From: Mizuhopecten yessoensis
Taxonomy: Eukaryota
Assembly: GCF_002113885.1 (NCBI RefSeq)
Contig: NW_018404943.1
Location: forward strand, 892,363 to 956,362
Direction: 5' to 3'
DNA: 64,000 bases
In this document: positions 3,995 to 63,537 of the stretch, piece by piece
Position numbering within the stretch: position 1 is the stretch's first letter
Layout of the letters: every line of letters starts with the position of its first letter
Translations under genes and position numbers: made by a program
Notes under the pieces: model-generated
What the model saw: only the letters and a program-made list of their open reading frames with translations
What the model was told of the DNA's origin: nothing
The model's database searches: none

Positions 3995-4347
3995 TCATGG
4001 TGCTGGTATAGACTCCTGGTAGCCTAAACCCTGGGACCCTGACACACGAGAAAAGCCGTAATTCGGGCCCAAACCTTCAGATGAATACAGCGAGCTTGGA
4101 CGTTGAAGATATCTTGGGCGGTACCTCTTCTGAGCAATAAGCTTAACTCCCATAATCACAAAACCAATAAATACAGCAACAAACACAACACCAATTAAAC
4201 TTCCAATCAAAATTGTCATCTGGACTCGGGTCAGACCAGACTCCTCCTCCACTGCCCCAGGGTTGGGTGTGGTCTGTCGAACAGTTTCATGATATCTTTT
4301 TGTGTTGAGCCGTTCTTCCTTTTCCTTAAAGCCAGGAACTATGTCAT
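3995..4347 (-). CDS. Gene A last coding exon: juxtamembrane stalk, TM helix and ~49-aa cytoplasmic tail
   Basis: ttgcag acceptor in frame with ORF 3995-4252; [23 protein letters not shown] followed by basic [11 protein letters not shown]. Confidence 0.85.
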
Positions 4348-7300
4348 CTGCAAGTTGTGAAGAGAAAAAATAAATGATTTTGACTTTTTTAAAGAAAATG
4401 TGAACAGCTCTTATCTACAACAGGTGTAAGAATGTTGTCAAGGAGATCAGTTGGACCAAGATTAAAGATTTAATATCATCATTATTAATATCATATTCTA
4501 TAATATTGGCCTTCAATTTGAAACTGCAATAAAACCAATGTTCTGCATTAAAATTACTGGGTAATAGTGTATAAAGTTTTGACAAGCATCATTACTATAT
4601 GAGTAGAATAATAAACATTCAGTTAAACAGATTAACTGGAAATTTTAGGGTAATTTACAAAGCAATTCCAATTAAGAATAATGATGGTAAGGAAGAATAT
4701 TAATTTAATCAGAAAGGCAAAGAAGGCTCTTCAGTACTTATTGATTTTTTCTTGGTTTTTTTTCTCCAGTATGTGTCTCTAATGTCTTTGAGGTAAGAAC
4801 TTTTTACCTAAAAATGCCTCATTGTCCGGTTTTAAGAGCTTTCCTCTTGCTCCCTCAAACATGAGGCAGTGATAAGATCCATAAGTGTTGATGCAGACCT
4901 GTGTGCCCACTCGTCCTCCACAAACACTGTCCCTACTTTCACATTCATTGATATCTGCAGAAATACAAATGAACAAACTCTAAAACCAATGCCATTAAGC
5001 CACAAAGAGATTTTACCTCATTATAATATATATGTATACTTACTACACATTGAGCTATGATTTCAAAAAGCTATAAACATGTTCTCTCTACACACAGAAG
5101 AGTAGGGGGTCAAAAACCTAGTTATACATGTCCCCATTCACAAACCATTGATCTGACCTGTTAAATTAAACTCAGCACTGCTACCCGACATAGATATACT
5201 GTACTTTCCACTAATGTTTTGTCCCCCGTAGATATATTCCATATTGAGGTTGTGATCTTACAAACTGCATTCTCCCCTGAGTTGGGACCTCACAAACTGC
5301 TTCCTCCCCTGAGTTGTGACCTCACAAACTGCATTCTCCCCCGAGTTGTGACCCCACAAACTGCTTGCTCCCCGAGTTGTGACCTCACAAACTGCTTTCT
5401 CCCCGAGTTGTGACCTCACAAACTGCTTTATCCCCGAGTTGTGACCTCACAAACTGCTTTCTCCCCGAGTTGTGAGCTCACAAACTGCTTTCTCCCCTGA
5501 GTTGTGACCTCACAAACTGCTTTCTCCCCTGAGTTGGGACCTCACAAACTGCATTCTCCCCCGAGTTGTGACCTCACAGACTGGTTTCTCCCCTGAGTTG
5601 TGAGTTGTGACCTCACAACCAACTGTATTTTCCTCCAAGTCCTGACCTCACAAAGATATACTGCATTCTCCCTTTTGTTGTAACCTCACATGAAAATTGC
5701 ATTCTCTCCTCAATTATGGCCTCACAAAGATTACTGTATTTCCCCTAAAATATGGCCTCACAAAGATTACTGTATTTCCTTTACAATATGACCTCACAAA
5801 GACATAGCACACTCTCTCCTGAGTTGTGACTCACCAAGCTATACATTTATACAAAGTAATATGTATAAATGGATCGACAGAAAGATAAAAAGATTTTATC
5901 AAAATTAAAGTGATACTCTTATAAACAGTACTTAGCACTTTGTAGATGACTACATAAAAGTGGACATTTTTCACTGTGCGTAAATGTGCACGCTATTCAC
6001 ATTGAATAAATTAGTGCATGTATACATAGACAATTACATATAGATTATAGATATATACAGTGTTTGGTTTGGTTTTGGTTAGTATTGTTTAACGTCCTAT
6101 CAACAGCTATGGTCATTTAAGGACGGCCTCCCCTGTGTGCAAGATGCAAGCGTGTAGTGTATGCGTTTGTGTTTTGGGCTGCGATATGTTCGTGATTGTC
6201 TCCTTGTGATAGCGGGGAACTGATGCCGAATATATAGTGCTACCTCACTGAAACATACTGCCGAAGACACCCAGCAGGACACCCCACCCGGTCACTGCGA
6301 ACCAGTCGTCCCACTCTTAAAATGCTGAGCGTTAAGCAGGAGTAGAAACTACCATTTTTACAGACTGGTATGTCTCGGCCAGGGGACAGAACCCAAATCC
6401 TTCCTCACAGGGACGAACGCTCAACTAAAGGCCAAAAGTGAGGCATTGTCAAGGGAGACATTAGAGATACAGTGTAGCATATATTGAGCTAGAGACCATT
6501 GCCGACATGAAATTCTCCCCATCACAATCAGCTGAAGGATCGAGTCACAATGCAAGCATTTCCACTATAACTGTAATGAATGATTGTCTATAAACATATG
6601 TTCCTATTCCGTCTTTGCGTATTGAAGAGTTATCTTCTCTTGGTAGCAGGTATTGATTGTTACGTCACTTGTTTGTGAGAATAACGTAATCAATTTTTGA
6701 GAAAACGACGTTATTTTCTCACACAGACCATTGACGTAACAATCAATACCTGCTCCCAAGAGAAGATAACTCTGCAATACGCAAAGACGGAATAGGGAAC
6801 GTAATAATTGAACTTGTAAGTCACTCTTTTCCAAGCTTTCGGGCTTAGCCCTTCGTCAGGGATCAAATGTCAACATGTTTGTCAAGATGGATGTGACATA
6901 TAGGTCCAGTGACATTTGATCCCTGACGAAGGGCTAAGTCCGAAAGCTTGGAAAAGAGTGACTTACAAGTTCGTTAATGTAATGAATGACATAATTGAAG
7001 CTATATAAGGATCCAGCAACAACTATAATGCTGATTACCTGAACAAGTGTGACCATCAATGTTGAGGGTAAATCCTGCATTACAAATGCACCGATAAAAA
7101 CCTACTACGTTGGTACAGATCTGATCACATGGTCCCAACTCATTACATTCGTCAATGTCCGAACAGGTGACGCCATCTTGTTGTAGTCGGAACCCGAAGA
7201 AGCAGCCACAATGAAAGGCCCCGAATGTGTCCACACATAGCTGGGTACAGTTGCCTCTGTTAGAGGTCAGACAATGGTTGATGACTGCAATGATCAATGA

Positions 7301-63100: not shown

Positions 63101-63537
63101 CCAGAAATCTGTATTTCAATAGCATTTCATTATCGGTGTTTCCCCCCTAGAAATCCAAATTATAGAATTTGCAAGCGATTTAAAAGATTTTTGCATTGTT
63201 TAAAAAAATGATATTCTTAATTAAATATCGCATAGGAACTCTTAATCTAAATACAATGTAATTCACAAAATATTTGCAGCATACATTAATTTGTATTCAC
63301 GGCATATATTATAAACAAGATGACCTAATCAAGTAGTAAAATTTTGTAATGACAATGACTGGTAATTGAACAGCAGATTGATGACAATTTTTTTACGCTT
63401 AGGTATTACTGGCACAGTTGGTGCTACTGGTAGTAAGGGTGATACAGGAGCTGTGGGCAACAACGGTGCGACTGGTACTATAGGATCAACGGGACAAAAA
63501 GGCCAAGCAGGAACTGATGGTGTTACAGGACCTCAAG
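48067..63537 (+). CDS. Gene B (partial, 3' end outside window): giant Thr-rich collagen-like protein with signal peptide, >2,869 aa
   Basis: Join: 48067-48133, 48298-48563, 50481-50706, 52481-52540, 53603-54355, 55922-63022, 63403-63537. All introns GT..AG, phases 1,0,1,1,1,1, open throughout, ending at a donor (GTGAGG) with no stop. Confidence 0.85.
48298..48563 (+). CDS. Gene B exon 2: first half of N-terminal domain
   Basis: ttttttag acceptor, GAG|GTAGGT donor, phase 1 to 0; homologous to gene A exon 2. Confidence 0.85.
50481..50706 (+). CDS. Gene B exon 3: second half of N-terminal domain
   Basis: ttttgtag acceptor, G|GTAAGT donor, phase 0 to 1; homologous to gene A exon 3. Confidence 0.85.
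52481..52540 (+). CDS. Gene B exon 4: [14 protein letters not shown] linker and start of helix (GPTGLQ)
   Basis: ttaacag acceptor, AAG|GTAAGT donor, 60 nt, phase 1-1. Confidence 0.85.
53603..54355 (+). CDS. Gene B exon 5: 251-aa Gly-X-Y segment with three imperfections
   Basis: ttacag acceptor, AAG|GTAAGC donor; register breaks at GE-GST, GI-GET and G-GVK. Confidence 0.92.
55922..63022 (+). CDS. Gene B exon 6: 7,101-nt exon, 789 Gly-X-Y triplets
   Basis: ctttacag acceptor, G|GTAAGT donor; GGN every ninth base; no register break noticed on reading. Confidence 0.95.
63403..63537 (+). CDS. Gene B exon 7: 15 Gly-X-Y triplets
   Basis: gcttag acceptor, AAG|GTGAGG donor, 135 nt, phase 1-1. Confidence 0.88.

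What the first reader, a model, noticed from the sequence alone, without database searches (positions are those of the whole stretch)
3995..63537. Head-to-head pair of paralogous giant Thr-collagens, one membrane-anchored: candidate undescribed extracellular filament system
Seen: two divergent spliced genes share a signal peptide exon, a homologous two-exon N-terminal domain with identical intron phases (1,0,1) and a very long Gly-X-Thr-rich helix. Gene A ends in EGFs and a TM helix; the C-terminus of gene B is outside the window. Established: head-to-head collagen paralogs (COL4A1/COL4A2, Drosophila vkg/Col4a1) are co-regulated and co-assemble, but type IV chains have 7S/NC1 domains and Pro-rich helices, which are not seen here. 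Inference: this is a separate collagen family that may form a cell-tethered plus long secreted (or also tethered) filament coat, for example at a cuticle, glycocalyx, mantle or adhesive surface. The unequal helix lengths favour separate homotrimers over a simple heterotrimer.
Basis: partly seen in the sequence, partly recalled or inferred. Interest (0 to 1): 0.9.

Follow-up and report, generated by a model that had tools for sequence, protein, structure and literature searches.

The report
Scallop threonine collagens, one membrane-anchored
Two neighbouring, related genes in what is probably a scallop encode very long collagens that use threonine instead of hydroxyproline; one is shown by RNA to be tethered in the cell membrane, a build known from bacterial surface fibres and a brachiopod but apparently undescribed in molluscs.

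Summary
Gene A (minus strand, 20583-3995, 1679 aa) is signal peptide, unassigned ~160-aa beta head, Thr stalk, ~390 Gly-X-Y triplets, three EGFs, one TM helix. RNA contigs splice the helix exon through a 24-nt micro-exon to the EGF and TM exons, so type I anchoring is supported. Gene B (plus strand, 48067 to beyond 63537) shares the head (Z 10-12, phases 1,0,1) and has at least 888 triplets, 813 uninterrupted. Neither has Pro in Y; Thr fills 55%/41% of Y, in alternate triplets; B is rich in KGD/KGE salt-bridge motifs. They are not type IV, fibrillar or MACIT collagens. Closest: Lingula EGF-collagens (one has Thr helix plus the same EGF-EGF-EGF-TM end, different head), Riftia glyco-Thr cuticle collagen, bacterial Scl/BclA. 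The COL4-like 'head-to-head system' is unproven: start codons are 27.5 kb apart across a LINE, satellites and a gap; B splicing, co-expression and tissue were not shown. Best reading: inverted paralogs making separate O-glycosylated homotrimeric rods for an epithelial surface coat. The scan noted this stretch before, not on other DNA.

The parts
20508..20583 (-). Gene A exon 1: start codon and signal peptide (acceptor-like site just upstream suggests a further 5' non-coding exon)
   Evidence: not RNA-tested
18198..18460 (-). Gene A exon 2: first half of the head domain
12863..13076 (-). Gene A exon 3: second half of the head domain
9000..12716 (-). Gene A exon 4: 60-aa Thr-rich stalk (26 Thr) then ~390 Gly-X-Y triplets, mostly a 27-aa (81-nt) tandem unit
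   Evidence: 3' end spliced in RNA contigs
7909..7932 (-). Gene A 24-nt micro-exon: two more triplets, in frame
7039..7284 (-). Gene A exon: two EGF domains (FXa_inhibition/cEGF/EGF_CA)
4808..4954 (-). Gene A exon: truncated 4-Cys EGF_CA and linker
3995..4347 (-). Gene A last exon: stalk, TM helix (4213-4151), cytoplasmic tail, stop; transcript contig reaches 3910
48067..48133 (+). Gene B exon 1: start codon and signal peptide (acceptor-like site just upstream)
   Evidence: splicing not RNA-tested
48298..48563 (+). Gene B exon 2: first half of the head domain
50481..50706 (+). Gene B exon 3: second half of the head domain
52481..52540 (+). Gene B exon 4: Pro hinge, Cys-x-x-Cys, first triplets
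53603..54355 (+). Gene B exon 5: helix with three short imperfections
55922..63022 (+). Gene B exon 6: 7.1-kb non-repetitive exon, 788 uninterrupted triplets
63403..63537 (+). Gene B exon 7: 15 triplets, ends in a donor; gene continues beyond the window
40221..40470 (.). Assembly gap in the intergenic region; linkage of A and B depends on it

Best explanation
An inverted duplication left two paralogs of an undescribed family of hydroxyproline-free, threonine-based collagens. Shown: gene structures, shared head, helix composition, and the spliced collagen-EGF-TM transcript of A. Inferred: both chains enter the ER, the Thr in every second Y position is O-glycosylated, and this (plus KGD/KGE inter-chain salt bridges in B) replaces hydroxyproline in stabilising a triple helix. 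In A the C-terminal TM anchor gathers three chains and nucleates zipping towards the N-terminus, giving a neutral ~0.34-micrometre glycosylated rod that holds three beta-sandwich heads away from the cell, a lollipop like bacterial Scl/BclA. B makes a separate acidic homotrimer of at least 0.76 micrometre, probably locked at the head end by its Cys-x-x-Cys. The heads bind glycans or each other, so the two rods build a tethered plus long-fibre coat on a particular epithelium. Tissue and partner are guesses.
For: Gly is invariant over 813 consecutive, otherwise non-repetitive triplets in B; no Gly change among 37 distinct codon variants in A's array, 20 of them synonymous. Lys in Y is followed by Asp/Glu 59 times vs 17.6+-3.6 in triplet shuffles, max 34 of 5000; KGD/KGE are triple-helix salt-bridge motifs (PMC11923368). 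No Pro in Y; Thr alternates (lag-1 autocorrelation -0.75 A, -0.47 B). (Gly-Pro-Thr)10 is triple-helical only when galactosylated (PMC11923368); Riftia cuticle collagen uses glycosylated Thr (PMC11766948). RNA splicing of A and strongly uneven expression: depth 321 in X18, 3 in X15, none in 1.9 Gb of X23 reads. Head and its phases 1,0,1 recur in another species (L001/L004).
Against: No protein-level data; glycosylation, trimerisation and location are untested. A's helix has no charges and only low-propensity triplets, so it depends wholly on an unproven modification. Head fold is only weakly jelly-roll/CBM-like from a half domain (best Z 4.2). B's C-terminus and splicing are unseen. Run tissues are coded. 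Nucleation by a TM anchor is from my own knowledge of procollagen experiments; the paper could not be retrieved.
Confidence: 0.5

Rival explanations
1. Shell-matrix or shell-attachment collagens: A tethers mantle or muscle-attachment cells, acidic B binds calcium and mineral, as proposed for the EGF-collagens of the Lingula shell.
For: Four of 17 Lingula EGF-collagens are in the shell proteome (PMC4595640); B helix has net charge -124; calcium-binding EGFs in A.
Against: A comparative table lists no fibrillar collagen in carbonate shells (PMC13425148); whether the Lingula Thr-collagen P0219 is among the shell ones was not determined; no tissue data.
Confidence: 0.2
2. A COL4-like co-regulated pair: a shared bidirectional promoter in the 27-kb interval drives both, and the chains co-assemble (heterotrimer over part of the length, or head-to-head network).
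For: Divergent orientation; acceptor-like sites before both start codons allow distant 5' exons; two of three runs picked for holding B words also hold spliced A, the unpicked run holds none.
Against: 27.5 kb with LINE, satellites and a gap; helices differ in length, charge and sequence; B's word share may come from intronic repeats; neighbouring inverted paralogs need no shared promoter.
Confidence: 0.15
3. Mucin-like or polyproline-II chains rather than collagen triple helices: Gly-X-Thr is simply a dense O-glycosylation scaffold on a transmembrane-mucin chassis.
For: A has a mucin-like Thr stalk, EGF-TM end, no charges and a homogenised VNTR.
Against: Strict Gly periodicity and KGD/KGE enrichment make sense only in a three-chain helix.
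Confidence: 0.1
4. The pairing, or gene B, is an assembly artefact or silent relic.
For: Gap between the genes; B splicing not tested; no ortholog found in protein databases.
Against: 7.1-kb open non-repetitive exon; same repeat on both gap flanks; B stretch present at 94-98% of words in 14 runs, 13 of them listed as DNA.
Confidence: 0.05

Closest known systems
Lingula anatina EGF-collagens (Luo et al. 2015, PMC4595640), especially XP_013406006 / LOC106170605 (P0219)
   Same: Signal peptide, globular head, 309 Gly-X-Y triplets with Thr in 42% of Y, EGF after the helix, and a C-terminal EGF-EGF-truncated EGF-linker-TM cassette; gene A's EGF pair matches best the membrane-proximal pair (45% identity); type I topology.
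   Different: Head is IgGFc-binding, repeated after the helix; no match to the A/B head; helix split over 8 exons; no divergent collagen neighbour within 10 kb. Orthology not shown.
Riftia pachyptila cuticle collagen (glycosylated Thr) and annelid giant cuticle collagens
   Same: Thr replacing hydroxyproline in Y (Riftia); very long helix with globular ends (PMC11766948).
   Different: Sequenced giant annelid chains are 7.7-8.9k aa with 22-33% Gly-X-Pro (PMC12403961), against zero here; no TM form reported there; terminal domains could not be compared.
Bacterial and phage collagen-like surface proteins (Streptococcus Scl2, Bacillus BclA, phage fibres)
   Same: No hydroxyproline; Thr- or salt-bridge-stabilised helix; head-stalk-anchor build; they dominate the hits to A's helix.
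   Different: These genes are spliced animal genes with EGF/TM modules; the likeness is compositional; no shared globular domain found.
Type IV collagen gene pairs (COL4A1/A2, vkg/Col4a1)
   Same: Divergently transcribed collagen paralogs.
   Different: No 7S or NC1 domain in A, no Pro in Y, almost no interruptions, huge exons, start codons 27.5 kb apart.
Transmembrane collagens XIII/XVII/XXIII/XXV (MACITs)
   Same: Collagen helix displayed from the plasma membrane.
   Different: They are type II (N-terminus inside); gene A is type I with a cleavable-type signal peptide and C-terminal anchor.

Membership tests
Type IV collagen pair | C-terminal NC1 (C4) domain | tested here: not met
   A ends in EGF-EGF-EGF-TM by RNA; B end outside window
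Type IV collagen pair | Cys-rich 7S domain and Pro/Hyp-rich interrupted helix | tested here: not met
   No Pro in Y, 1 and 3 imperfections, globular head
Type IV collagen pair | Short shared bidirectional promoter and co-expression | tested here: inconclusive
   27.5 kb between start codons; starts unknown; weak co-occurrence
Fibrillar collagens | COLFI C-propeptide, ~338 triplets, 54-nt-based exons | tested here: not met
   A lacks COLFI; 3.7- and 7.1-kb helix exons
MACIT / type II transmembrane collagens | N-terminal cytoplasmic tail and TM before the helix | tested here: not met
   TM follows the helix in the spliced transcript
Lophotrochozoan EGF-collagens (Lingula type) | Collagen helix combined with EGF_CA/FXa-type EGF domains | tested here: met
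   Gene A; B unknown
Lophotrochozoan EGF-collagens (Lingula type) | Same head domain as the Lingula Thr-collagen (IgGFc-binding) | tested here: not met
   No Pfam hit for the head; head profiles do not hit P0219/P0220
Lophotrochozoan EGF-collagens (Lingula type) | Presence in shell matrix | not testable with these tools
   Run tissues coded; no proteome
Annelid giant cuticle collagens | Chain of 7-9k aa with high Pro in X and Y | tested here: not met
   Pro in Y zero; B length only bounded below
Riftia-type glyco-Thr collagen | Thr dominates Y | tested here: met
   55% and 41%
Riftia-type glyco-Thr collagen | Y-Thr carries O-galactose | not testable with these tools
   Needs glycoproteomics
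Riftia-type glyco-Thr collagen | Sequence orthology of terminal domains | not tested
   No Riftia cuticle collagen sequence was retrieved

The most novel reading that the evidence does not exclude
An undescribed spiralian family defined by a new head domain builds a two-part, hydroxyproline-free fibre coat: a type I membrane-anchored glyco-collagen and a micrometre-scale partner, expressed together from a shared divergent locus, an animal counterpart of the bacterial collagen nap.
Probability: 0.25. Interest if true: 0.85.

Novelty: new variant of a known kind. Interest (0 to 1): 0.6.

Why it matters
Animal collagens are taken to need prolyl-4-hydroxylation; the one well-known animal exception is a vent-worm cuticle. 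Here are two full gene structures with no Pro in Y in an ordinary marine invertebrate, one with at least 813 uninterrupted triplets (the longest run among the ~240 proteins fetched was 341) and one anchored in the reverse orientation to all classical transmembrane collagens. They make testable how glycosylated Thr and salt bridges fold a very long helix in an animal cell, define an unassigned extracellular domain, and offer templates for hydroxylase-free collagen materials.

Tried and rejected
Pfam on head exons and their homologs: nothing. PDB sequence search with both half-domain profiles: nothing. ESM Atlas features: only unnamed viral clusters at 0.83 or less, and membrane beta-barrel noise. 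Folding of half domains: exon 2 pLDDT 69, four strands, best Z 4.2 to carbohydrate-binding jelly rolls, no viral match; exon 3 pLDDT 46, unusable. Helix searches were swamped by prokaryotic Gly-X-Thr proteins and collagen VII; these are compositional hits, so horizontal transfer and collagen VII orthology were rejected. No B ortholog of 1300-4140 aa appeared, which says nothing of longer or shorter kin. Profile search of the head exon found only two exon fragments; metagenome scan empty. Helix homology between A and B beyond composition: not significant for 3- and 4-triplet words. Byssus role: little support, almost no collagen in scallop byssus (PMC9168380). A bacterial promoter scan is irrelevant to an animal. 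Literature searches found no description of these genes.

Full report
Observation. Six-frame translation shows long Gly-X-Y frames at 8992-12858 (minus) and 53584-54393, 55855-63033, 63366-63608 (plus). Exon boundaries were fixed by hand and checked: all introns are GT-AG, both models are stop-free, and both have phases 1,0,1 after the signal exon and two head exons. With the micro-exon, gene A is 1679 aa; gene B is at least 2869 aa and ends at a donor at 63537 with no further helix exon in the window. The head exons are homologous pairwise (Z 9.9 and 12.5, no shuffle of 2000 reaches the score; crossed pairs at chance).

RNA test. In run X18 one 1159-nt contig of depth 321 runs from the end of the helix exon through a 24-nt exon at 7932-7909, the two EGF exons and the TM exon to 3910; unique intron bins are empty. 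X15 shows the same joints at depth 3. X17 has only unspliced scraps and 1.9 Gb of raw RNA reads (X23) have none, so expression is restricted. The runs are labelled RNA by guess, but spliced joints at GT-AG sites show transcripts. RNA-type runs hold 16-44% of the words of 47900-50800, where exons are 19% of the letters, but intronic repeats could supply these words, so B's expression and co-expression with A are only suggested.

The gap and the arrangement. The 250-N gap is intergenic; no frame crosses it. Its flanks carry the same short repeat in the same orientation (88% over 67 nt), consistent with a collapsed local array; the repeat also occurs at 41097, so this is support, not proof. Start codons are 27,484 nt apart, with a LINE reverse transcriptase frame (37551-39641) and about 10 kb of satellites between. 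Both start codons follow a pyrimidine-rich acceptor-like site, so untranslated exons probably lie upstream and the true starts are unknown. A shared promoter is neither shown nor excluded.

The helices. A: 388-triplet run, X mostly Pro/Asn/Leu/Ala/Ser/Val, Y Thr 55%, no acidic residues, ~336 nm; it is largely a 27-aa unit in about 37 copies with 20 synonymous and 17 non-synonymous variants and no Gly change. Fifteen copies are identical, so the copy number may be wrong in the assembly. B: non-repetitive (DNA autocorrelation about 0.5), 888 triplets, Y Thr 41%, Pro 1.6%, net charge -124, at least 762 nm; Lys in Y is followed by Asp/Glu 59 times against 17.6 expected. Neither has Pro in Y. Thr falls in alternate triplets in both. 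KGD/KGE form inter-chain salt bridges and (Gly-Pro-Thr)10 needs galactose to fold (PMC11923368). This argues for true triple helices stabilised by O-glycans and, in B, salt bridges. The two helices share style but not sequence, which with the charge and length difference favours separate homotrimers.

The head. No Pfam or PDB sequence match. A profile of exon 2 found two single-exon gene calls from other animals, P0122 and P0123. The contig of P0122 also holds an exon 3 homolog, with phases 1,0,1 as here, so the domain and its gene structure are conserved beyond this species; the contigs are too short to show a helix and their organisms were not identified. A half-domain model is all beta with weak likeness to carbohydrate-binding jelly rolls (Z up to 4.2, below the useful level). 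Exons were joined only inside scripts, to check frame and count residues.

Organism. Not determined by me. Earlier notes on this genome call it the Yesso scallop; genome features fit, but I did not test it.

Comparison. The nearest animal protein is Lingula XP_013406006: signal peptide, IgGFc-binding head, 309 triplets with 42% Y-Thr, EGFs, and the same EGF-EGF-truncated EGF-TM end. Lingula has 17 EGF-collagens, four in the shell proteome (PMC4595640). Riftia cuticle collagen uses glycosylated Thr (PMC11766948); sequenced giant annelid collagens are longer and Pro-rich (PMC12403961). Bacterial and phage proteins match the helix by composition only. Type IV, fibrillar and MACIT membership fail on tested features. 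So every ingredient has a precedent, but this combination, and the head, seem undescribed; paper searches found nothing on it, within a library that lacks most subscription journals.

Note on human sequence: no contig taken for human was met. Named human collagen VII proteins came up among the hits; one was tabulated as a reference row, is not used in the argument and was not pursued.

Verdict. A real, well-built pair of paralogous Thr-collagen genes; type I anchoring of A is supported by RNA; the two-component co-regulated system remains a hypothesis. New variant of a known kind; interest 0.6.

Noticed in passing
window 37551-39641 (+): 697-aa stop-free LINE frame with a reverse transcriptase domain (Pfam RVT_1, E 6.5e-35); begins after the endonuclease region, so probably 5'-truncated.
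   Followed up: partly
window 21296-29893: About 8.6 kb of satellites: a 51-nt array then a 55-nt purine-rich array with strong strand asymmetry, upstream of gene A.
   Followed up: no
window 13113-13935, 16389-17949, 31951-33573, 35478-36897: Further tandem arrays (22, 40, 26, 44-50 nt units) in gene A introns and the intergenic region.
   Followed up: no
window 14624-15744 and 33920-34810: Two copies of one interspersed element, 79% identical over 700 nt, same orientation.
   Followed up: no
window 3848-3936 and 8091-8179: Inverted copies of an 89-nt TTAA-flanked MITE-like element, extremely abundant in all RNA runs; gene A's transcript contig ends inside the first copy and no canonical poly(A) signal lies within 490 nt of the stop.
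   Followed up: partly
window 20584-20620 (-) and 48040-48066 (+): Acceptor-like pyrimidine tracts directly before both start codons; upstream non-coding exons likely.
   Followed up: partly
L003:10001-29219: Lingula XP_013406006: uncharacterised type I membrane protein with three IgGFc-binding domains, a Thr-rich collagen helix and furin-like RRKR/TRKKR sites; itself seems undescribed in detail.
   Followed up: partly
L001:205-1002, L004, L002:259-545: Head-domain exons from two unidentified animals, with the same intron phases.
   Followed up: partly
window 41345: A single N inside a 5-nt repeat; left as it is.
   Followed up: no
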